A stretch of 63,236 nucleotides of DNA, the filler included, from Octopus bimaculoides (taxonomy: Eukaryota): NCBI RefSeq assembly GCF_001194135.2. It is 3 parts of 3 records of this genome, joined end to end, with 100 filler letters (N's around TTAATTAATTAA, not from the genome) between each part and the next. Parts side by side here need not be neighbours in the genome. Positions count along the whole stretch, not along the records: positions 1 to 31,586 come from NC_068998.1; 2 more parts are not named here. One strand, 5' to 3'. This document shows, piece after piece, positions 4,712 to 31,586 of this stretch; position 1 is the first letter of the stretch; the number at the start of each line of letters is the position of its first letter. A model generated the notes under the pieces. That model saw only the letters and a program-made list of their open reading frames with translations. It searched no databases and was not told where the DNA came from. Both the position numbers and the translations under genes were made by a program.

Positions 4712-5290
4712 TCATCTGTTCATGTAAAGAATCTCAGATGGAAAATTTGGGAATGTCTTACAAATCTTCACTGTGCCACGAATAAATTGGAGCTGAAGAA
4801 TCTGCATCTTCTTATTTTGATCTTTCTCTGTGAAACCGAGTATTTCTAGATTTTTGTGTAAATTTGTAGGTACATAGCCTAATGCACCTATGATAATAGG
4901 TACAAATGAGAATTTATAGTCAGGTACAAGAGTTATAAGTTCCATAAATGTTGTCCTTTTCAATGAACTTTTGATGGTACGTCCACATCCGCTGGTCTGC
5001 TGATCTTTACAAAATTGCATGACTTCCGTTCCCTGTCCTACAGAACAATATCAGACCTATTATTTTTGCACCGAGTTGACACTTTTATTGGAGTGTTCCA
5101 CCAGTATTCCTTAATTTTAAAGGAGTGGGTAACTGTTGCTTCTTTTGATGTAGACACGAAGGCAATCGTTCCTGCTGATAGCATTATAAATAATCTTTGC
5201 AACTATATTATATCACATGACAGGTAGAACCTCATTTTGGGGCAGTTACTAATAATATGGATGATATCTTCCACACTGTGTTAGCAAAGC
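4712..5290 (-). mobile_element. 3' fragment of an RLE-type non-LTR retrotransposon (R4/Dong/NeSL-like): zinc knuckle plus restriction-like endonuclease
   Basis: The minus strand reads LC*HSVEDIIHIISNCPKM (CCHC knuckle), WNTPIKVSTRCKNNRSDIVL (NRPDIV-like) and LVPDYKFSFVPIIIGALG, all typical of the RLE C-terminus. Confidence 0.8.
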
Positions 5291-5299
5291 AAAAGATAC

Positions 5300-5330
<31 letters not shown>

Positions 5331-5714
5331 TGTATGTATGTATGCATGCATGTATGTGTGTGTATGTGTATGCACGTAAGCGGAAAGAGAAGCATGGGGA
5401 GGAATGATTTGGAGCGGCGTAAAAAATTTTGAGTTTGAAAGAGTTAAGAATGCTGAAATGAAAAGAAAATTTCGTAAAAATGAGATTAAAAGTAATAACG
5501 TTGCGAGGGATTCTCATTCTTTCTTTAAATGTTGTTCATGCCAAAAAGTATGTATTGTGCACACTGGTACGAGATCGCACCAGCGTATTCATATGGATGA
5601 GGCATACATAAGAACATGTGCATTTTCTTCGTTTTCTTTTTACTTTTTCCTTATTTATACCACGTGTAGTCTTTTTTCTTTGAAACCTATTTCTATTCTA
5701 TATATATATACATT

Positions 5715-5880
5715 GGCGCACGAGTGGCTGTATGGTAAGAAGCTTGCTTCCCAACGACATGATTCCGGGTTCAGTCTCACTGCATGCCACCTTGGGCAAG
5801 TGTCTTCTACTATATCCCCGGGTGAACCAAAGCCTTCTGAGTGGATTTAGTAGATGGAAACTGAAAGAAGCCCGTCGTAT

Positions 5881-5946
<66 letters not shown>

Positions 5947-6170
5947 GTGTGCATGTATTTATGCATGTGTTTGTGTGTCTGTGTTTGTTCCCCAGCATCG
6001 CTTTGACGACCGATGTTGATGTGATCACGTTCCCGTAACTTAGCGGTTCGGCAAAAAGACCGATAGATTAAGTACTAGGCTTACAAATGATAAGTCCTGG
6101 GGTTAATTTGTTCGACTAAAGGTGATTCTCTAGCATGGCTGCAGTCAAGTGACTGAAACAAGTAAAAGAA
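5715..6170 (+). mobile_element. Full SINE family B copy (tRNA head, internal microsatellite, 3' half)
   Basis: A-box TGGCTGTATGGTAAG, B-box GGTTCAGTCTC, internal (CA)/(TA)/(TATG) tract, tail GACTGAAACAAGTAAAAG. Confidence 0.85.
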
Positions 6171-9497: not shown

Positions 9498-9557
9498 GAG
9501 CAGTGAGCTGGCAGAATCGTTAGGACGCCGGGCGAAATGCTTAGTGGTACTTCGTCT
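9498..9557 (+). mobile_element. SINE family A 5' head, truncated by the following element
   Basis: GCAGTGAGCTGGCAGAATCGTTAGGACGCCGGGCGAAATGCTTAG...TCGTCT. Confidence 0.85.
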
Positions 9558-9677
9558 CTGTGGAGTTATTGCGTCAGTTTATGTTGAAATATTTATCGAA
9601 TTGTTGCTATTGTTATTTGATTTGTATTGTTGTTAGAATTGTTGTTGTTGCTTTTTTTTTTGCCCCATTGTGGGAAA

Positions 9678-11139
9678 ATGGAGAAGATGCAAGAGGGAGG
9701 CCCAAGTTATGCGGCCGAAACGAGCAGAGGAGCAGACGTGCAAGAGTTGGAGGTCCACGAGATAAAAGTGGAGCCAAGAAGGATGAAGGAGAGTGAAAAA
9801 TTAATCACCAAGGAAAGTAATATTCTGAAGGTAACGCCACCTGAAGAATTATCGGCCAACGTGTTAAAAAGAACGGTAACATTTAAAACTATGAAGACAG
9901 CTACAAGAAAAATAGAGATTGCGTAGATAGAAGCCATAGAGGTGTGTATCAAGGAGTTGAAAAGAGTTACAACATACGTTACGAGAGGGAGGAGATACGC
10001 TACTGTGGAGGTACGCTTCACAACGAAGGAGGAAGCANNNNNNNNNNAAAAGAGTTACAACATACGTTACGAGAGGGAGGAGATACGCTACTGTGGAGGT
10101 ACGCTTCACAACGAAGGAGGAAGCAATAAAGCACTCCACAGAGGCAATAAGGTCAGAAGAATGGGTGCTCTTGCCTTCGTACTGCGGAAAACGTGTGGCC
10201 AAAGTGCGAGTGGGTAGGATGCCACCCGAATTAAAGGAAGAATGGCTGATGACAGCAGTAACATATAATATGAAGGATGGGAAGATTTTGAAGGCCACCA
10301 GGACCCAGAAAGTAAACTAATGGGGATACGGTATTGAATTGACAATACAAGAAACTACGGAGGATTTGAACAGTGTAGTGGATGAGATTGTGCTGCCAGA
10401 AGATGTAAGATTGAGAGTCAGTGTAGAGGGAAGGCCGCCGATATGTTTCACATGTGGAGAGAGGGGCCACATGAAGACGTGGTCCACCCAAAGAGAACAA
10501 CAAGCAGAATAGGTGGAGAGAAAGGAGAGTGTGGACCAGGTCATGGTAACAGAAAAAGAAAAAGAAACAGAGAATGGATTTACTATGGTTAAAAAGAAAA
10601 GAAGGAGGAGCAGAGAAATGAGTTCTCCACCAGAGAAGCAGAAAAAGAAGAGAGAAGAGGTGAGAAAAGAAACTGTGATGGAGATCAGTAAGAAGGAAGG
10701 ATAAAGGGAAAGTAAAAAGAAAGTGGAGTTACCAGTAACGATACCGGTTGTTCTAGTGGAGAAAGATTCGGAAATACAACTGCAGGAAGAAGAGTTGGGG
10801 AGATTGTTTAAGATAGAGGAAGGAAAAAGAGAACAAAAAGTACAAGATAAAGGCAAGAAGATACGAGGAAGAGATGTAGTGTGGCATTATGTGACATACC
10901 TAAAGAATGTTGAAACAGAAAAAAAGATAAATAAGTTTCATTCAATAGTAAGAGTGAAGATGCCTCCATACGTCTACGCAGAGGATATGAAGGCAATACT
11001 GATTGAAGAAGAGAACTACAGAAAGTTGAAAGAGATGTGTGGAGATAGCGTTGACCCACCAAGAGTGGAGGTAGAATTCAAAGAGTTGCCACCAGAAGTG
11101 AATCTGAGAGATATTGAACCACTGATAAAGTTCTACTGA
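9678..11139 (+). pseudogene. L1/Tx1-type ORF1 (gag-like, RRM-like region plus zinc knuckle), about 457 codons, with no ORF2 following
   Basis: After collapsing the 78-bp gap duplication, ORF-track pieces 9627, 9942, 10093, 10513 and 10723 share one frame with 4 nonsense codons and no frameshifts. EGRPPICFTCGERGHMKTWS is a CX2CX4HX4C knuckle with the last C changed to S (TCC). Confidence 0.7.
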
Positions 11140-11325
11140 AAGAGGAAAAAATGATGTATGTTAAATGATGTTATTTTTAGGAAAATAATGGTGATAAAGT
11201 AGGAAAAAAAAGAACAATTGTAGATAGTACATATAAGGGTTCAAATGGTACCGCATGGGAGTGAGGTCTGTGTGGCCATTTTCATTTTTTTCATTATTAT
11301 ATAATTTCAACCCATTTACATTCGT

Positions 11326-17739: not shown

Positions 17740-19139
17740 NNNNNNNNNNNNNNNNNNNNNNNNNNNNNNNNNNNNNNNNNNNNNNNNNNNNNNNNNNNNN
17801 NNNNNNNNNNNNNNNNNNNNNNNNNNNNNNNNNNNNNNNNNNNNNNNNNNNNNNNNNNNNNNNNNNNNNNNNNNNNNNNNNNNNNNNNNNNNNNNNNNNN
17901 NNNNNNNNNNNNNNNNNNNNNNNNNNNNNNNNNNNNNNNNNNNNNNNNNNNNNNNNNNNNNNNNNNNNNNNNNNNNNNNNNNNNNNNNNNNNNNNNNNNN
18001 NNNNNNNNNNNNNNNNNNNNNNNNNNNNNNNNNNNNNNNNNNNNNNNNNNNNNNNNNNNNNNNNNNNNNNNNNNNNNNNNNNNNNNNNNNNNNNNNNNNN
18101 NNNNNNNNNNNNNNNNNNNNNNNNNNNNNNNNNNNNNNNNNNNNNNNNNNNNNNNNNNNNNNNNNNNNNNNNNNNNNNNNNNNNNNNNNNNNNNNNNNNN
18201 NNNNNNNNNNNNNNNNNNNNNNNNNNNNNNNNNNNTATATATATATATATATATGTATATATCGAGAGAAATAAATTAGTAATGAAGTGTATCTTTGTAC
18301 GTTTGTCTACAATTTTCAGTTAGGCAGCTCTGTAATAATGAGAGTTTGATAAAGGCGCGCGAAGACGCATAAAATCTTGTTACAAATCTCCTTATGCGGT
18401 CTTATAAACTTAAATATAATTATCATAGAGATATACAATTTTCATGTCATTCTATCTTTTGTTTATGTATATGGTGGTGGAATTGTATGCTAATGCATCT
18501 ATCTATCTTACATGGAAGTTACTAAATGTAATTGTATGTGGATGTAAGATATTTATATCTTACCCCTATATTCCTTATAATAGTTCAAACCAATTCAATT
18601 TTGCATTTTTCATATGATTAATCATACTTGCGAAGCATTCATATCAGTTTCATGAACCTGCCTTGAGGCCATTTAAAGTCCATGTTAAGATTTACCTCTA
18701 ATTAGCTATCGACTCAAATAAGCTTACAACACCGTTCTGCGTGCACGAAATAGATAAGTTTCTTTATCGAAGATGAAATTTACGAAGTTAGGAGCAGAAA
18801 CTAAGAATTCTGAAGTTGCCAAATAGAAAAGAAAGAACAGGAAAACAAACTTGTACAATGAATAAAGATAAATGCAAGAAAATTCAAGAAGCGTAGCAAA
18901 AAAATAATTTATTTGCAATATTATTTCATGAATAATGTCCATACCACAAAAAATAATTGTGTTAGAATTTTATGCACTTTCCTTAGTTTTCATAGCTGAG
19001 AATTTTTATTTCTTTCAGTCGCCCAGGGTGCCATTATATTGAATCCATCCTTGGTGAGGTGTGGATTAAATGAGAAACGGTAGGAACGAAGACAGCGTAC
19101 AATACACTGCTGTTGTTATGTATGTTACTATTGCTATCG

Positions 19140-19690
19140 GTATTGCTACTACTACTGCTACTACTACTACTACTGCTGTTGCTGCTACTACTACTGCTGT
19201 TGCTGCTACTACTGCTGCTGTTGCTGCTACTACTGCTGCTGTTGCTGCTACTACTGCTGCTGTTGCTGCTACTACTGCTGCTGTTGCTGCTACTACTGCT
19301 GCTGTNNNNNNNNNNNNNNNNNNNNNNNNNNNNNNNNNNNNNNNNNNNNNNNNNNNNNNNNNNNNNNNNNNNNNNNNNNNNNNNNNNNNNNNNNNNNNNN
19401 NNNNNNNNNNNNNNNNNNNNNNNNNNNNNNNNNNNNNNNNNNNNNNNNNNNNNNNNNNNNNNNNNNNNNNNNNNNNNNNNNNNNNNNNNNCTGCTGTTGC
19501 TGCTACTACTGCTGCTGTTGCTGCTACTACTGCTGCTGTTGCTGCTACTACTGCTGCTGTTGCTGCTACTACTGCTGCTGTTGCTACTACTGCTGCTGCT
19601 GTTGCTGCTACTACTGCTGCTGTTGCTGCTACTATTACTGCTGCTGTTGCTGCTACAACTATTGCTGCTGTTGTTGCTGCTAGTGCTACT
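19140..19690. repeat. 21-bp trinucleotide-derived minisatellite (ACTACTGCTGCTGTTGCTGCT)n, gapped
   Basis: Direct reading; contains a 185-N gap. Confidence 0.9.
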
Positions 19691-19715
19691 GTTGCTGACG
19701 TTTAGTTCCTTATTT

Positions 19716-19940
19716 CTTTATTGCCCACAAGGGGCTAAACATAGAGGGGACAAACTAGGACAGACAAAGGAATTAAGACGATTACATCGACCCCAGTGCG
19801 TAACTGGTACTTAATTTATCGACCCCGAAAGGATAAAAGGCAAAGTCGACCTCAGCGGAATTTGAACTCAGAACGTAAAGACAGACGAAATACCGCTAAG
19901 CATTTCGCCCGGCGTGCTAATGTTTCTACCAGCTCGCCTG
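19716..19940 (-). mobile_element. SINE family A, A2-tail subfamily
   Basis: TTATTTCTTTATTGCCCACAAGGGGCTAAAC...GAATTTGAACTCAGAACG...CCAGCTCGCC. Confidence 0.9.
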
Positions 19941-25790: not shown

Positions 25791-26727
25791 CTAGAGTGTC
25801 TATGCACACACGGTCAAATGTGTAAATGCTTTTATATATGTATGATGATGTTAAAGCATTGTATTGCTACTTGTTGTGAGAGGCACTTTAGATATCTTGA
25901 AAAACGGCATTGAAATTATAAATAATCCTCACTTAAATATCTCTGTTCCGGAAAATCTTCTAAACGAAATAGCGTCCAGCGTCCATTTTCAAGAGAGTTG
26001 CCATGGGAATTTTCCAGCTTAATGTCAACATCTTTTATCGACAAACATGCAGGCATAATGTGTGTGCTGAGAACATGATATTGATTTCTGCATGGGTTCC
26101 AAATGAGTGCTAGATGAATTACAACGAATTAAATAAGTCAATCATTCCAGAAAAGTGAATCGTGCATTCTAGCTTGAAAATCAACGACAAGTTTCCGTCG
26201 AACATCTTATTTGGATACTTTACCCTGTCTTGTCGATTTTAATCTGTTTACATGCAACTTCACATACTATTTCGATTTACCATAATACCTCATCCCCCAC
26301 CCATCCCCTTCATCTTCAATTCTTACAAACAGTGTCACCTTCTTCTGGACAGATTTCATTATCCTTCACTCATTGTTACTGATTTTCAATAAAAGTGGTC
26401 GGCCACTATCAACAATTGTCAATGAAATATCAACAGCTTTGATCTGAATTGATGGCATAACAAATATCAACGAAAGGCCTCTTGATAAACATCAAGTCGA
26501 ACACGTATCTATGATAACGACATCTAATTTGAAAACTAATACACGATTCCCTACTTCATAAACCGTTTGTCGTTTTGCTTAGTTTTATATTATAATGATT
26601 TTACGATTATGAGCTTCCGTAAATATTTGTTCACATTATTATCTTAAATTATGAAGCCAGAAGTAGACAAAACAGACACCACCTTCGTTGTCTCCCTCCA
26701 TTCTCAATAGTGTTCTAATTTATATTA

Positions 26728-27437
26728 CAGCAATCCCTCGACTATCGCGGGTTTTACGTTCTAACCCCCACCCCCACCCCGCGATACGTGAAAATCCTCG
26801 AAGTAGAAACTGTACTGTACTGTATATATTTTTTTAATTATTTTTTATAATTTGTATATATTTATTTTATTATAAATGCAAAACAATACCACACACGCAC
26901 CTCCCGAGTTTCGTTTTCCATACAGTATGTGCGATTCTTTGTTTACTCATCTACGGCACACTACGTATTTTCTTTTAATATACTTTAATTAACAAGGCGG
27001 TGAGCTGGCTGAAATGCTTAGCGGTAATTCGTCTGTCTTTACGTTCTGAGTTCAAATTCCGCCGAGGTCGACTTTGCCTTTCGTCCTTTCAGGGTCGATA
27101 AATTAAGTACCAGTTGCGTAGTGGGTCGATATAATCGACTGGTCCCCTCCTTCAAAGTTTCGGGGTTTGTGCCTAGAGGAGAAAAGAATATACTTTAATT
27201 AATGTGTTATACAGTGCAGTACTGTACTCTATTTTTATTTATCAATTTGTAGGCGTGAAAATGCGTAGTTTACCACAGAAAAATAATTTAAATCTAAACG
27301 TACATAAATATCCATTGGCTGCAGAAACCCGCGATATACTGAAAAGTCCGCGATATAAATTTACATATATTAGCCAGAAAAATCCGCGATGTACAAAGGG
27401 TGCGATAGGTGAACCGCGATATAGCGAGTGATTACTG
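26728..27437. mobile_element. Tigger/pogo-like MITE with a nested SINE
   Basis: TA|CAGCAATCCCTCGACTATCGCGG at the left end and (reverse complement) CAGTAATCACTCGCTATATCGCGG at the right end. Repeated CCGCGATA subterminal motifs. Confidence 0.75.
26993..27186 (+). mobile_element. SINE family A copy with perfect 16-bp TSD
   Basis: AATATACTTTAATTAA at 26977-26992 and at 27187-27202. Confidence 0.9.
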
Positions 27438-27734
27438 TGCTCAAATTTCCTCGACTACTACCACTATGCTTATTAGAATTTAAAGATCTCTGAGCTTTTA
27501 CTTGCCTTCATCGCCATTTCAATAAATTATTGATGTTTCGCGCAAAACTAAAGGCATGCACGCTCCATAAAAGCTAATTGAAGTTCACCATATGTGAATA
27601 GTGTTTCCATTGCGCACTGTAAATGTTTTATGTGCACTGAGGATACTGGACAAATGTCATGAAATTTGATGTGGCTATCTGCACTGTGCCTCTCCTCCTC
27701 ACTTTCTCACTCTTTCTCACGTACTCTCTCTTTC

Positions 27735-27775
<41 letters not shown>

Positions 27776-27822
27776 ATATATATAGAGAGTGGGAATGGGA
27801 AGGAGAGAGAAAAAGAGAGAGA

Positions 27823-27823
<1 letters not shown>

Positions 27824-27880
<57 letters not shown>
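27824..27880. repeat. Compound (AGC)n(AGT)n microsatellite
   Basis: Direct reading. Confidence 0.95.
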
Positions 27881-27881
<1 letters not shown>

Positions 27882-28864
27882 AGTTTGTTGTGGTGTTTAA
27901 CATTATGAACGTTGAGACCATTTAACGGGTTGCACTCTTTTGCAATCATTATGACAAGGTCTCTAAGAATACCCTCACCTGTGCAGTCACAGAGGAGGCC
28001 CGAAACAGTTGTTTGGGGTACGTTCTTTCTTCCTTTATCCCTCTCATTAAATATTAAGATAAAAAGTTGCAAGTCCACGGTCGTTTTACAGAATTAAATA
28101 TTAGGTCGTCTTCGCCGGTAAGAATCGGTGATGTAAGTTTAAAATATCGATAATGTCAGTTGATTTGATAAAAATTCTAAAAATTACAGTCTAAAAATTC
28201 ACGACTGGTTCAGTTTGTTCCTGACCAAAAATCAATGGAACATATCCTTCCATCGCTATCGCTGCTGTACTCTGCCCATGGCTACACTTGGCTTTTTGCT
28301 TTTTCTACTTGTAATTTAGTTATTGATATTGTTTAACCTCAGGTCACTTCTATTCCAGCAGAACTATGATCAAAGACTTTACAACCATAACTATTACGTT
28401 TTTTCTTTGTTTGTTTTTGTTTTGTTTGTTTTTTTTTGTTGTCTATTTTCCTAGTTCTTTTTTTTTTTTTTTTTTTTTTGTCTTTACCGACGTTGTATAT
28501 CTAGCACGACAGGGTGTGATTTAATATAGATTTGTCTGTTATTTTGAATGACTGCGTTGAAGCTGCTCTATTGGTTCATGTGCAATTATGTTGCTTGTTG
28601 TTGCTGCTACTGCTGCTTTTTTAGCCTTAGGTCATCGAGGAAACATATGATCAAAGGTAGTCCAGCAATGACCTTCCATTCTTTTAGAGTTATGAAAGAC
28701 TGCATTGTTTCCTTTCTCTATATAAGACGGCATGCAGTGGTCTGCCGGGGATTTGACTGCCATTTCTTGCACGTTGATCGGCCCCTGTAGGTAGACAGAC
28801 ACGATTGCAGTATTGAGTAAAATACGCACACACAAACACACACACACACACACACACAAACATT

Positions 28865-29045
28865 TAAGTTTATCTTTTATCCTTTATTTGTTTCAATCAT
28901 TTGACTGCGGCAATTCTAGGGCATCGCCTTGAAGGGTTTTAGTCGAACAAATCGAGCCCTGGCACCAAAGCCTGATACATTGGAGCAAGTATGACTGTGT
29001 GGTAAGAAGCTTGCTTCTCAACTACATGGTTCCCGGGTTCAGATC
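28865..29045. mobile_element. SINE family B fragments: 3' end on minus, head on plus
   Basis: TTTGTTTCAATCATTTGACTGCGG...TAGTCGAACAAATCGA, then GACTGTGTGGTAAGAAGCTTGCTTC...GGGTTCAG. Confidence 0.75.
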
Positions 29046-29235
29046 AACCATAAAGCGGTAATATGATCAAAGATGTTCTAGCCATGATTATTCCGTCATC
29101 TTTCAATTATAATGTATCTACGTTCTGGCAGATTCGAATGTGAGTATACTAATCGTTGCTAGATTTCGTCTTCGAAGAACATCTCCTTTTTGATAGTGTG
29201 TGTTTACAATACACTTGATTCATTGAAGCAAGAAG

Positions 29236-29284
29236 ATTTAAAACACTGCTGTGTTTTGACCTGATTGTGTCTTTTTTGTCAAAG
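29236..29284 (-). ncRNA. Decayed type I hammerhead, paralogue of 29568-29616
   Basis: CTTTGA-CAAAAAA-GAC ACAATCAG GTC-AAA-ACAC AGCA GTGT-T-TTAAAT. Stems retained, core degenerate. Confidence 0.5.
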
Positions 29285-29567
29285 CCCTCATCGGATTAAC
29301 GAACTTAAAGAAGAATGGCAGCTCTTGTTTATGAAATTCTATAAATTATTTGCTGATGCGTGATAATGTCTGCAAAACTGATAATAAGTTGTCATGCGCA
29401 CGGAGAACAGCAAGAATTAAAAGAATGACGTGCATATTTATTGTTGATACTTTCGACAGCTTCTAACATGAATATACTAATCGCTGTTTTATTCCTTCTT
29501 TGAAGAACACTTTCTCCTTTCAGATGATGAGTTTTCACCACACACTCGATTCAATGACGTAATGACA

Positions 29568-29616
29568 CTTTAAGACATCACAGTGTCTCGACCTAGTTGT
29601 GTCTCTTCAGTCAAAG
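29568..29616 (-). ncRNA. Type I hammerhead, single core mismatch (A14>G)
   Basis: CTTTGA-CTGAAGA-GAC ACAACTAG GTC-GAG-ACA CTGTGA TGT-C-TTAAAG. 6-bp stem I, G10.1-C11.1 pair, GUC triplet. Confidence 0.7.
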
Positions 29617-30492
29617 ATACCTCTAGATTAAAACCACCCCGTGTTTAACCAAACACCCGCTAAGAGTCAATTGAAGTCAAGAAAAGGCTTCCTTAGAATT
29701 TATTATTTTCCTTGAAAGTCTCAATAGGAAAAAGGAGTAGCATACTACTCTCAACAACAATGATGTGGCGTTCTACTTGAGTGGTAAACTTAATACGTTG
29801 CCAGTTTAAGATTATTGCAAGGTTTTGGGGTGTCTTCAACTGGGTCCTCTATACTAACACATCCTAGCCGGGTCTTCAGTTTGACGATACTTTCCTGCCT
29901 CCTAACAGTCCTGGATGGGCCATGGGCACTGCTCTTTTACTGATTTCACGAGAAAATAATGTGTATTAAACATATGGCTATAACTATACAAATGTTGTAA
30001 ATGACCTCGACAGAGAAATATTTGTGTTCAGTTCATCCTAATGGAAGCACTGACTCTGCGGATTTATTTTAAAAAATCTCCATCTACCTCACCACCAAAG
30101 TGAACTCGATATGAACGAATGAATAACTGCAGTTTCAGGAAGAGGGAAGTGGTGGAGAAGGTAGAGAGGAAGCGATGTCAGAAGGTCGTAATGCCTCAGG
30201 TTTCACGTGTATGAGAGACAGTTTATTTTTGTTGTGTCTGAACAAAGAACGTAACAAATTAGTTGACCGTGTTGTCACCGGAAGTTGATCGACAACTCAG
30301 CTCTCGCCACGTTCATTAACACTATTGTTAAAAATTACTATAGAGAAAGAGTTAGGATTGAATATTTGTGTTTTTACAACCATGCTTTCTTTCTTTCTCT
30401 TTTTCTCTCTCTCCGTATACACACACACGTATGTGTATGTCTGTGTGTAAGTGTGCGCGCATGTATGCGTATACACACGCGCGCGCACACAC

Positions 30493-30534
<42 letters not shown>

Positions 30535-31087
30535 TCATATATGTATGTCTAAAAATATATACATATAATTGTATATACAAATATCCATGTATACATTTAA
30601 GTTTGTGATTGTATATATATATATATATATATGAAGGCACGTGATACATAGATTTGGTTGTCGTACTTGTGATCTGTAGGTCGTATGTTCGATTTTGGGA
30701 TTAGACGGCGCATTGTGTCCTTAAAATAAGAGATTTTATTTCATGCTACTTTGTTTTTAATTCAGCCAAAATAAGTACCAACAACAGCTAAGTGAAACAG
30801 ATTAGCGTACCGTTCTGGGAGAGTTTTGTACTCGCAACTGCTCAAACCCCACATAAATTGTGATAGGTTCAGGCCCAGTGGTCCTGTACACTCGAGACAG
30901 AATTAAATTTACTAAGCGTGTGGAAATATATCGAAATATATACAATATACGTAAATCAATGCATATGTTTAAATACATGTATATATATAAGTGTTCGTTG
31001 AATGTTCGTTGGTCGGTTGGTTTTCCCCATTCACGCTTAACACTGTATAGAGAGAAAGAGAGGAAGAGAGAGTAAAAGTGAGAAACA

Positions 31088-31245
31088 GGCGCAGGCGTGA
31101 CTATGTGGTAAGAAGCTTGTTTCCTAACCACATGGTTCAAGGTTCAGTCCCACTGCGTGACACCTTGAACTTCTACTATAGCCTCAAGTGGACAAAGACT
31201 TGTGAGTGGATTTGGTAGATGGAAACTGAAAGAAGCTCGTCGTAT
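31088..31245 (+). mobile_element. SINE family B 5' half
   Basis: GGCGCAGGCGTGACTATGTGGTAAGAAGCTTG...GGTTCAGTCCCACTGCGTG...GAAAGAAGCTCGTCGTA. Confidence 0.85.
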
Positions 31246-31586
31246 ATATATATATATATATGTAAGGGACGACCGTGCGAACTCAAAAAGGAGCAATGGT
31301 GACGAATGGAAAAACAGAGGACTCCTTTTATTTAAACGTGTCACACGGTCGAACACACAATTATATATCGATGATGATATAGATGATATGTTATGCGACG
31401 ATAACATAGATGACCAGTAATGAAAGACCACAACCGTATTAGATGAATAACAGAGATATTTATTATGGCGTTAAAGTGTATGTCTGTGTGAGAGTGTGAA
31501 TGCGACATATAATAACATAATCAAAGACAGGCCGTCATACAAAGAAAAGTGTGTATGTGAGTGATACATGTGTGAGTTATTACAGC

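What the first reader, a model, noticed from the sequence alone, without database searches (positions are those of the whole stretch)
29236..29616. Retrozyme-like unit: two type I hammerheads 332 nt apart in a diverged direct repeat
Seen: a ~175-bp direct repeat occurs twice, and each copy holds a minus-strand hammerhead fold at the same position. The 29568 copy has a 6-bp stem I, CUGAAGA, a G-C-closed stem II, a looped stem III and GUC, with only A14>G. The 29236 copy keeps all three stems but has a decayed core. Established (from recalled literature): non-LTR retrozymes are tandem ~170-400-nt units each bounded by a type I hammerhead, and they yield abundant small circRNAs (reported in cnidarians, mussel and axolotl). 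Inference: this is a fossil copy of an octopus retrozyme family whose hammerheads, unlike the PLE-type ones here, can fold as monomers. I do not know of a cephalopod description but cannot check.
Basis: partly seen in the sequence, partly recalled or inferred. Interest (0 to 1): 0.85.

Follow-up and report, generated by a model that had tools for sequence, protein, structure and literature searches.

The report
Decayed hammerhead-bearing retroelement relic (retrozyme-like)
A short non-coding repeat carrying a worn-out self-cutting RNA motif (hammerhead ribozyme) sits here as one-and-a-half copies. It looks like the dead remains of a known kind of small mobile element, so it is real but fairly ordinary.

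Summary
A ~195-bp direct repeat occurs twice (R_A 29106-29299, R_B 29436-29631; 71-75% identical, period ~331). A unique 136-bp spacer lies between the copies. R_B holds a type I hammerhead on the minus strand (29568-29616). Rfam scores it 28.3 bits, below the 34-bit gathering score, with E=0.004 for the whole piece. My own descriptor found nothing in 6.4 Mb of composition-matched random sequence. Its only core defect is A14>G. R_A keeps the three stems at the same position but has lost U4, G5, G8 and G12.

The best reading is an old, dead, more-than-unit-length (R-S-R, about 1.6 units) insertion of a short non-coding hammerhead retroelement. That means a metazoan non-LTR retrozyme, or equivalently a non-autonomous derivative of a Penelope-like element.

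Family membership could not be tested. There is no other copy in the 31.6-kb piece. None of the available databases holds this genome. No target-site duplication, third unit or neighbouring reverse-transcriptase remnant was found. The hammerhead segment has diverged as much as the rest of the repeat.

I found no paper describing retrozymes or hammerheads in cephalopods. The organism itself could not be verified. Verdict: a likely new member of a known kind, of modest interest.

The parts
29436..29631 (-). Repeat copy R_B (196 bp). It is the upstream copy in the hammerhead-sense orientation.
   Evidence: Local alignment with R_A scores 148.5 against a shuffle maximum of 36.5. nhmmer with the repeat profile gives E=1e-59.
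29568..29616 (-). Type I hammerhead with a single core defect (A14>G). Its H17 is C at 29574, so the ancestral cleavage site would lie between 29574 and 29573.
   Evidence: Rfam RF00163 scores 28.3 bits (gathering score 34), E=1.3e-4 for 1 kb and 0.004 for the piece. It is the only descriptor hit in the piece, with none in 6.4 Mb of random sequence.
29300..29435 (-). Unique spacer S (136 bp) between the two repeat copies. It has no ORF, no PBS and no purine tract.
   Evidence: It shows no significant similarity to either flank or to R and no other copy in the piece. There is no tRNA-Met PBS match inside it. The ORFs here are <=52 aa and have no homologues.
29106..29299 (-). Repeat copy R_A (194 bp), the downstream copy.
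   Evidence: nhmmer E=3e-57.
29236..29284 (-). Decayed hammerhead relic homologous to 29568-29616. The stems are kept. The core reads CAAAAAA...AAAA, and H17 is U at 29242.
   Evidence: It aligns column for column with copy B. Rfam does not detect it. Its stem III is a 4-bp ACAC/GUGU helix with an AGCA loop.
29242..29573 (-). Notional 332-nt monomer RNA that two intact hammerheads would have released.
   Evidence: Derived from the two H17 positions. Its predicted fold is no more stable than shuffles: z=-0.34 linear and -0.42 circular. That test is not discriminating, because an authentic mussel retrozyme gives z=-0.9.

Best explanation
This is the fossil of one insertion of a short (~332-nt unit), non-coding, hammerhead-bearing retroelement. 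It belongs to the kind called metazoan non-LTR retrozymes, which recent work treats as non-autonomous derivatives of Penelope-like elements.

Inferred mechanism:
1. A master copy was transcribed.
2. Its type I hammerheads cut the multimeric transcript into ~332-nt monomers, which a host ligase could circularise.
3. A reverse transcriptase supplied in trans, probably from a PLE, copied the circular or multimeric RNA for more than one turn.
4. The cDNA integrated as a more-than-unit-length copy. That is why about 195 bp (R) is present twice around a single 136-bp spacer (R-S-R, about 1.6 units), with one hammerhead near the 5' end of each R.

Since insertion the copy has decayed neutrally. The two R copies now differ by 25-29%. 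One hammerhead carries A14>G and the other has lost four core bases, so neither should cleave today.

Shown here: the repeat, its limits, the hammerhead motif and its defects, and the absence of coding capacity. Inferred: transcription, cleavage, circularisation, trans-mobilisation, and that the two R copies were identical at insertion.
For: - The hammerhead is not a chance match. Rfam gives E=0.004 for the piece against all families. That is about 1e-6 for this family alone, or about 0.08 expected in a 2.8-Gb genome (my scaling). The descriptor found 0 hits in 6.4 Mb of random sequence.
- The architecture is canonical type I rather than the minimal PLE type. Helix I has 6 bp. Helix II has 3 bp plus a mismatch, with loop CAACUA against the Rfam consensus CAAAUA. 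Helix III has 3-4 bp with a 4-6-nt loop. The definitions of canonical and minimal types come from PMC4209133.
- A homologous relic lies at the same offset in the second repeat, 332 nt away. That falls within the 150-450-bp unit range of non-LTR retrozymes (PMC7229834).
- Only R is duplicated. S has no second copy in either flank. A simple tandem DNA duplication would give R-S-R-S. A more-than-unit cDNA or a PLE-style partial tandem gives R-S-R (PMC4209133 discussion; PMC8557442 Fig. 2 legend).
- GC is 35%. There is no ORF over 52 aa, no PBS and no Pfam domain in the sense frames within 26.6-31.6 kb.
- The hammerhead segment has diverged as much as the rest (26.5% against 29.9%), as expected for a dead copy.
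- The JC distance between copies is 0.31-0.36, or 0.15-0.18 per copy. If the organism is an octopus, this falls near the PLE expansion reported for Octopus vulgaris at JC 0.2, about 56 My (PMC13282606).
Against: - No other family member could be found. There is none in the piece. The protein and DNA collections available do not appear to hold this genome. A multi-copy family is therefore assumed, not shown.
- No target-site duplication was found. The longest shared flank word is 7 nt, which is chance level.
- Only about 1.6 units are present, not an array. TRF does not call it.
- Neither hammerhead has an intact core. The ancestral state at position 14 cannot be resolved from two copies.
- Stems I and II are weak. 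The hammerhead fold scores -0.9 kcal/mol against an alternative hairpin at -8.4.
- The monomer is not predicted to be unusually self-paired.
- No PLE or PLE-type hammerhead lies in this piece.
Confidence: 0.6

Rival explanations
1. A single hammerhead-bearing relic (a solo retrozyme monomer, a dispersed hammerhead or a pLTR fragment) was later partly duplicated at the DNA level by slippage, unequal exchange or repair. On this reading the two hammerheads were never the two ends of one transposition unit.
For: No target-site duplication bounds the R-S-R block. There are only two copies and no array. The 25-29% divergence between copies gives no information on how they arose.
Against: A simple tandem duplication predicts two full units (R-S-R-S). 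No second S is detectable in either flank. The R-S-R shape is what PLE-type and rolling-circle insertions produce.
Confidence: 0.2
2. An internally deleted autonomous Penelope-like element. The two repeats are its pseudo-LTRs, and the RT-endonuclease ORF between them has been lost.
For: PLEs carry hammerheads in direct terminal repeats (PMC4209133). PLEs are an established repeat class in Octopus (PMC13282606). Animal retrozymes appear to be related to pLTRs (10.64898/2026.07.22.740005).
Against: Only 136 bp lie between the repeats, and they show no RT or GIY-YIG trace. No such domain appears in the sense frames within 26.6-31.6 kb. The hammerhead has a true helix III and a short helix II. It lacks the long helix II and the absent or 1-2-bp helix III of metazoan PLE min-hammerheads.
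Confidence: 0.12
3. A chance hammerhead-like fold inside an unrelated local duplication.
For: The Rfam score is below the gathering threshold (28.3 against 34). The core is imperfect in both copies. The hammerhead fold is not the MFE.
Against: Rfam gives E=0.004 for the piece over all families. The matching descriptor found 0 hits in 6.4 Mb of composition-matched random sequence. Loop 2 and helix lengths also resemble the canonical metazoan motif.
Confidence: 0.04
4. An LTR-type retrozyme like those of plants, with LTRs that carry hammerheads and flank a PBS and a PPT.
For: It has superficially the same shape: two ~195-bp direct repeats, each with a hammerhead, around a short non-coding core.
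Against: The hammerhead is type I, not type III. There is no tRNA-Met PBS match in 29300-29435. There is no purine tract before the downstream repeat and no 4-bp TSD. GC is 35% against >55% in plant retrozymes.
Confidence: 0.02

Closest known systems
Metazoan non-LTR retrozymes (Cervera & de la Pena 2020, PMC7229834), for example the coral Amil224, mussel Mg353 and axolotl Rtz331/353 repeats
   Same: It has a type I hammerhead of canonical architecture and a unit length of 332 nt, within the 150-450-nt range. GC is low. There is no ORF, LTR, PBS or PPT. The hammerheads lie head to tail on one strand. Helix III has 3-4 bp, like the invertebrate hammerheads that can act as monomers.
   Different: Only about 1.6 units are present instead of a dimer-to-multimer array. 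Both cores are mutated. There is no evidence of other copies, transcription or circRNA. The predicted monomer fold is not unusually stable, although the mussel control is not either. There is no sequence similarity to the published coral, mussel or axolotl units beyond the hammerhead core (by eye).
Penelope-like element pseudo-LTRs with minimal hammerheads (Cervera & de la Pena 2014, PMC4209133; Craig et al. 2021, PMC8557442)
   Same: The direct repeats were generated as a partial tandem, each with a sense-strand type I hammerhead. The probable mobilising machinery is shared. A 2026 preprint derives retrozymes from pLTRs.
   Different: No RT/GIY-YIG ORF lies between or beside the repeats. The hammerhead is not the minimal variant: helix II is short and helix III is present.
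Hammerhead satellites and SINE-like repeats: newt satellite 2 (~330 bp) and Schistosoma Sm-alpha
   Same: It has a ~330-nt unit with one type I hammerhead. Loop 2 (CAACUA) is close to the CAAAUA of the Schistosoma/Rfam consensus.
   Different: Those are high-copy arrays or SINEs with intact, active ribozymes. Here there is a single decayed 1.6-mer. ARAGORN finds no tRNA-like part.

Membership tests
Hammerhead ribozyme type I (Rfam RF00163) | Covariance-model score at or above the curated gathering score (34 bits) | tested here: not met
   Copy B scores 28.3 bits. Copy A gives no hit at E<=10.
Hammerhead ribozyme type I (Rfam RF00163) | Three helices around the junction, with helix I open (type I topology) | tested here: met
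   Full-length model alignment 1-45. The descriptor gives stems of 6/3/3 bp in B and 5/3/4 bp in A.
Hammerhead ribozyme type I (Rfam RF00163) | Intact catalytic core: CUGANGA, GAAA, and U16.1-H17 at the cleavage site | tested here: not met
   B reads CUGAAGA / GAGA / GUC, so A14>G. A reads CAAAAAA / AAAA / GUU. From established mutagenesis knowledge (Ruffner, Stormo & Uhlenbeck 1990, recalled), changes at A14, G5, G8 or G12 abolish or greatly reduce cleavage.
Hammerhead ribozyme type I (Rfam RF00163) | Self-cleavage of the RNA | not testable with these tools
   This needs in vitro transcription of the locus and of a family consensus.
Metazoan non-LTR retrozyme | Canonical (not minimal) type I hammerhead | tested here: inconclusive
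   The architecture is canonical (helix I 6 bp, short helix II, CAAAUA-like loop 2, real helix III), but the core is mutated. Loop 1-loop 2 contacts cannot be judged.
Metazoan non-LTR retrozyme | Head-to-tail tandem repeats of a 150-450-bp unit, at least a dimer, with one hammerhead per unit | tested here: inconclusive
   There are two hammerhead positions 332 nt apart. Only 195 of the 332 nt are duplicated (about 1.6 units), and there is no third unit.
Metazoan non-LTR retrozyme | Non-coding, low GC, no LTR/PBS/PPT | tested here: met
   GC is 35%, against 37% for the whole piece, so this is not distinctive. ORFs are <=52 aa with no homologues. No PBS is present.
Metazoan non-LTR retrozyme | Multi-copy family dispersed in the genome | not testable with these tools
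   There is no second locus in the 31.6-kb piece. The genome is not in the searchable collections.
Metazoan non-LTR retrozyme | Expression as monomeric linear and circular RNA joined at the hammerhead site | not testable with these tools
   No RNA data are available. The fold z-score of the monomer is -0.3 to -0.4, but this test does not discriminate.
Metazoan non-LTR retrozyme | Co-occurrence with autonomous PLEs in the same genome | not tested
   There is no PLE ORF or PLE-type hammerhead in this piece. The literature reports PLEs in Octopus (PMC13282606), but the organism of the window is unverified.
Autonomous Penelope-like element | RT plus GIY-YIG endonuclease ORF flanked by the pLTRs | tested here: not met
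   Only 136 bp lie between the repeats. No Pfam RT or GIY-YIG hit appears in the three sense frames of 26600-31586.
Autonomous Penelope-like element | Minimal hammerhead (long helix II of 6-8 bp, helix III absent or 1-2 bp) in the pLTR | tested here: not met
   Helix II has 3 bp plus a mismatch. Helix III has 3-4 bp with a 4-6-nt loop. The definition is from PMC4209133.
Plant-type LTR retrozyme | Type III hammerheads in LTRs, tRNA-Met PBS, PPT, 4-bp TSD | tested here: not met
   The topology is type I. There is no PBS and no TSD.

The most novel reading that the evidence does not exclude
This locus is a dead copy of a retrozyme family that is still alive in cephalopods. Elsewhere in the genome there would be tandem ~330-nt units with intact, monomer-competent type I hammerheads, transcribed and circularised into abundant small circRNAs and mobilised by the resident Penelope-like elements. 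No paper in the searched library describes retrozymes or hammerhead ribozymes in cephalopods.
Probability: 0.25. Interest if true: 0.5.

Novelty: new member of a known kind. Interest (0 to 1): 0.3.

Why it matters
If the family proves to be multi-copy with intact members, it would extend hammerhead retrozymes to cephalopods. These genomes are rich in SINEs, LINEs and PLEs and edit their RNA unusually heavily. It would also supply a hammerhead with a real helix III for studying monomeric against dimeric cleavage, and a natural scaffold for circRNA expression in these animals. It would give another test of the proposal that animal retrozymes derive from PLE pseudo-LTRs. As it stands, this single locus is a decayed relic with no predicted activity. 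It adds only one data point to a phenomenon already documented in many invertebrate phyla, molluscs included.

Tried and rejected
1. Rfam at gathering thresholds gave no hit in the piece. The hammerhead appears only with E-value thresholds. The many miRNA-family hits are microsatellite and low-complexity artefacts.
2. Searches for further copies inside the piece found only the two known copies. I used blastn with word size 7, a pattern with 3 mismatches, and nhmmer with the R profile, the whole unit and S.
3. Searches for copies elsewhere all failed.
   - Exact look-up of four window ORFs in the assembly collection found none on record.
   - phmmer with a concatenation of all open segments of the unit in six frames found nothing at E<=1.
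   - DNA pattern scans of JGI metagenomes (twice), IMG/VR and GTDB genomes gave 0 matches.
   - I conclude that these collections do not cover this genome. I do not conclude that the family is single-copy.
4. The target-site duplication search gave a longest shared flank word of 7 nt, which is chance level.
5. I tested whether the monomer is a highly self-paired RNA. It gives z=-0.3 to -0.4. A genuine mussel retrozyme gives only -0.9, so I dropped this as a criterion.
6. I looked for PLE remnants. There is no RT or GIY-YIG in the sense frames of 26.6-31.6 kb, nothing in the ten longest non-repetitive ORFs, and no intact canonical or minimal hammerhead anywhere in the piece. The antisense frames near the locus and most of the rest of the piece were not scanned against Pfam.
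7. I considered G-to-A hypermutation or A-to-I editing as the cause of the core changes. Sites with A in copy A and G in copy B outnumber the reverse 15 to 7, which is not significant.
8. I considered a tRNA-like or pol III origin. ARAGORN finds nothing. The TTCGAATC word in copy A (29131-29138, minus) has no T-arm pairing around it.
9. Organism identification failed. The best homologue of a TE-like ORF lies on an unnamed ENA metagenome contig.
10. One script timed out, and one control energy calculation was mis-specified and discarded.

Full report
**What is there.**
The sequence at 29106-29631 consists of three parts: a ~195-bp segment (R_A, 29106-29299), a unique 136-bp segment (S, 29300-29435), and a second copy of the first segment (R_B, 29436-29631).
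- The local alignment of the two copies scores 148.5. The best of 300 shuffles scores 36.5.
- Identity is 71% over all columns and 75% without gaps. In a MAFFT alignment, 55 of 192 ungapped columns differ.
- The start-to-start distance is 331-332 nt.
- The repeat is therefore real.

**The hammerhead.**
With curated thresholds Rfam reports nothing in the piece. With E-value thresholds, the type I hammerhead model RF00163 matches 29568-29616 on the minus strand over its whole length.
- The score is 28.3 bits against a gathering score of 34.
- E is 1.3e-4 for the 1-kb search and 0.004 for the whole 31.6-kb piece against all 4227 families.
- Because the E-value is multiplied by the number of families, this is about 1e-6 for this family alone. 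By my scaling, that gives about 0.08 chance hits of this score in a 2.8-Gb genome.

Read directly, the motif is CUUUGA-CUGAAGA-GACA(CAACUA)GGUC-GAGA-CA(CUGUGA)UGUC-UUAAAG.
- Helix I has 6 bp.
- Helix II is closed by G-C but has only three pairs plus an A.G mismatch.
- Helix III has 3 bp and a 6-nt loop.
- The cleavage triplet is GUC.
- There is one core defect, A14>G.

A descriptor I wrote for this architecture finds only this site in the piece at <=1 core mismatch, and none at zero mismatches. It finds nothing in 6.4 Mb of random sequence with the same dinucleotide composition. I conclude that copy B derives from a true hammerhead.

Copy A (29236-29284) is not recognised by Rfam. It is a hammerhead only by homology. 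It aligns column for column with copy B, keeps the three stems and has a better helix III (ACAC/GUGU with an AGCA loop). Its core reads CAAAAAA...AAAA.

**Activity.**
Neither copy should cleave. A14, G5, G8 and G12 are invariant core positions (established knowledge of the hammerhead; G12 and G8 act as general base and acid, PMC6155905).
- The helices are also weak. The hammerhead secondary structure of copy B evaluates to -0.9 kcal/mol. An alternative in which G12-A13-G14 pair with C17-U1.1-U1.2 reaches -8.4.
- The hammerhead segment has diverged between the copies as much as the rest of the repeat (26.5% against 29.9%). Nothing suggests constraint since the copies separated.
- With only two copies the ancestral base at position 14 cannot be resolved. 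A GAAA ancestor and a GAGA ancestor each need two changes.

**Architecture and origin.**
Only R is duplicated. S has no detectable second copy in the 300 bp on either side, on either strand. TRF reports no array. The structure is therefore R-S-R, about 1.6 units of a 332-nt unit, with a hammerhead ~15 nt from the 5' end of each R in the sense orientation.
- A plain tandem DNA duplication would give R-S-R-S.
- A more-than-unit-length copy is what reverse transcription of a circular or multimeric RNA yields. It is also what Penelope-like elements (PLEs) produce as partial tandems, the pseudo-LTRs (PMC4209133; PMC8557442).
- No target-site duplication is visible. For a copy this old, that is uninformative.
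- S has no tRNA-Met primer-binding site and no purine tract.
- ORFs in the unit are <=52 aa.
- No reverse-transcriptase or GIY-YIG domain is detectable in the three sense frames from 26.6 to 31.6 kb.
- No intact canonical or minimal hammerhead exists elsewhere in the piece.

**Comparison with known kinds.**
Metazoan non-LTR retrozymes are defined as short (150-450 bp), low-GC, non-coding tandem repeats. Each carries a canonical type I hammerhead, and they are expressed as small circRNAs. They are reported from cnidarians, a mussel, an axolotl and, bioinformatically, many invertebrate phyla (PMC7229834).

PLE hammerheads are instead minimal, with a long helix II and helix III absent or 1-2 bp (PMC4209133). 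The motif here is of the canonical kind. Its loop 2 (CAACUA) is close to the consensus CAAAUA.

The locus thus works like, and most probably was, a retrozyme-type element. [quoted passage not shown] On that view, 'retrozyme' and 'PLE-derived' are not exclusive.

Membership is not established. The defining family-level features are multiple copies, arrays, circRNA and an active consensus ribozyme, and none could be tested.

The predicted fold of the 332-nt monomer is no more stable than shuffles (z=-0.34 linear, -0.42 circular). A cloned active mussel retrozyme gives only z=-0.9 and a coral one -2.9 (sequences from the supplement). This criterion therefore does not discriminate.

**Search for relatives.**
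- No other copy lies in the piece.
- Four ORFs of the window are not on record in the assembly collection.
- A six-frame concatenation of the unit finds no protein at E<=1.
- Pattern scans of JGI metagenomes, IMG/VR and GTDB genomes find nothing.
- A TE-like ORF elsewhere in the window has only unnamed ENA metagenome homologues at <=73% identity.

I read this as the source genome being absent from these collections. It says nothing about copy number. The organism could not be verified. The tRNA-derived SINE-like repeat next to the locus matches my recollection of the abundant Octopus SINE, but that is memory, not a test.

**Age (inference).**
Assume the two R copies were identical at insertion. 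Their JC distance of 0.31-0.36 then gives 0.15-0.18 per copy. On the Octopus vulgaris repeat clock (JC 0.2 at about 56 My, the PLE/LINE expansion; PMC13282606), this is roughly 40-50 My.

**Literature.**
In the searched library, no paper combines retrozymes or hammerhead ribozymes with cephalopods in a way that describes such elements. The only overlaps are the PLE paper of Craig et al., which discusses cephalopod Naiads without hammerheads, and unrelated papers.

**Verdict.**
The best explanation is a dead, ~1.6-unit insertion of a hammerhead-bearing short retroelement, a non-LTR retrozyme or PLE-derived element (confidence about 0.6).

The rivals are:
- a later DNA-level partial duplication of a solo relic (0.2);
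- an internally deleted PLE (0.12);
- chance (0.04);
- an LTR-type retrozyme (0.02).

It is a likely new member of a known kind, in a clade where none seems to have been described. This copy is a decayed fossil, so interest is modest (0.3).

Noticed in passing
28975-29042 (+); also 5708-5774 and 31098-31147: A short interspersed repeat (85% and 84% identity between copies), with the look of a tRNA-derived SINE (…GTGGTAAGAAGCTTGCTTC…GGTTCCCGGGTTCAG…), lies 64 bp from the end of R_A. ARAGORN calls no tRNA there. It resembles my recollection of the abundant Octopus SINE, which I did not verify.
   Followed up: partly
28827-28862; 30493-30632; 5296-5985; 27724-27827; 30415-30653: The piece holds (CA)18, long (AT)n/(TATG)n and other microsatellites. 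They produce dozens of sub-threshold Rfam 'miRNA' hits (mir-3149, mir-297, mir-1277 and others) on both strands. These are low-complexity artefacts.
   Followed up: partly
4715-5050 (-): A 102-112-aa ORF (…VPIIIGALGYVPTNLHKNLEILGF…) has 20 homologues, all on unnamed ENA metagenome or eukaryotic contigs (best 73% identity, E=1e-21). It has no Pfam domain. It is probably the C-terminal part of a retrotransposon protein.
   Followed up: partly
29106-29299 vs 29436-29631: On the hammerhead-sense strand, sites with A in copy A and G in copy B outnumber the reverse 15 to 7. Four of the five core differences are of this kind. The trend is not significant. It would fit G-to-A hypermutation of copy A or A-to-G (editing-like) change in copy B.
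   Followed up: partly
29384-29534: The unit matches its own reverse complement weakly over ~150 nt (nhmmer E=0.003, 11 bits). This imperfect palindrome spans the end of S and the tail of R_B. The fold z-score does not support a stable rod.
   Followed up: no
29131-29138 (-): TTCGAATC, the core of a pol III B-box or T-loop consensus, occurs in the tail of copy A. Copy B has GTTAGAAGC at the same place. There is no flanking T-arm pairing and no tRNA call.
   Followed up: partly
19070-19814; about 10000; about 16390: Runs of N (775 in the piece) interrupt a minisatellite that reads as (AVAATTA)n/(L)n in translation, and two other places. These are assembly gaps in repetitive DNA.
   Followed up: no
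9545-11140, both strands: This region has an unusual density of 80-190-aa open frames on both strands, in purine-rich, Glu/Lys-rich sequence. No Pfam domain was found in the five tested. It could be an exon or TE remnant, or simply a composition effect.
   Followed up: partly
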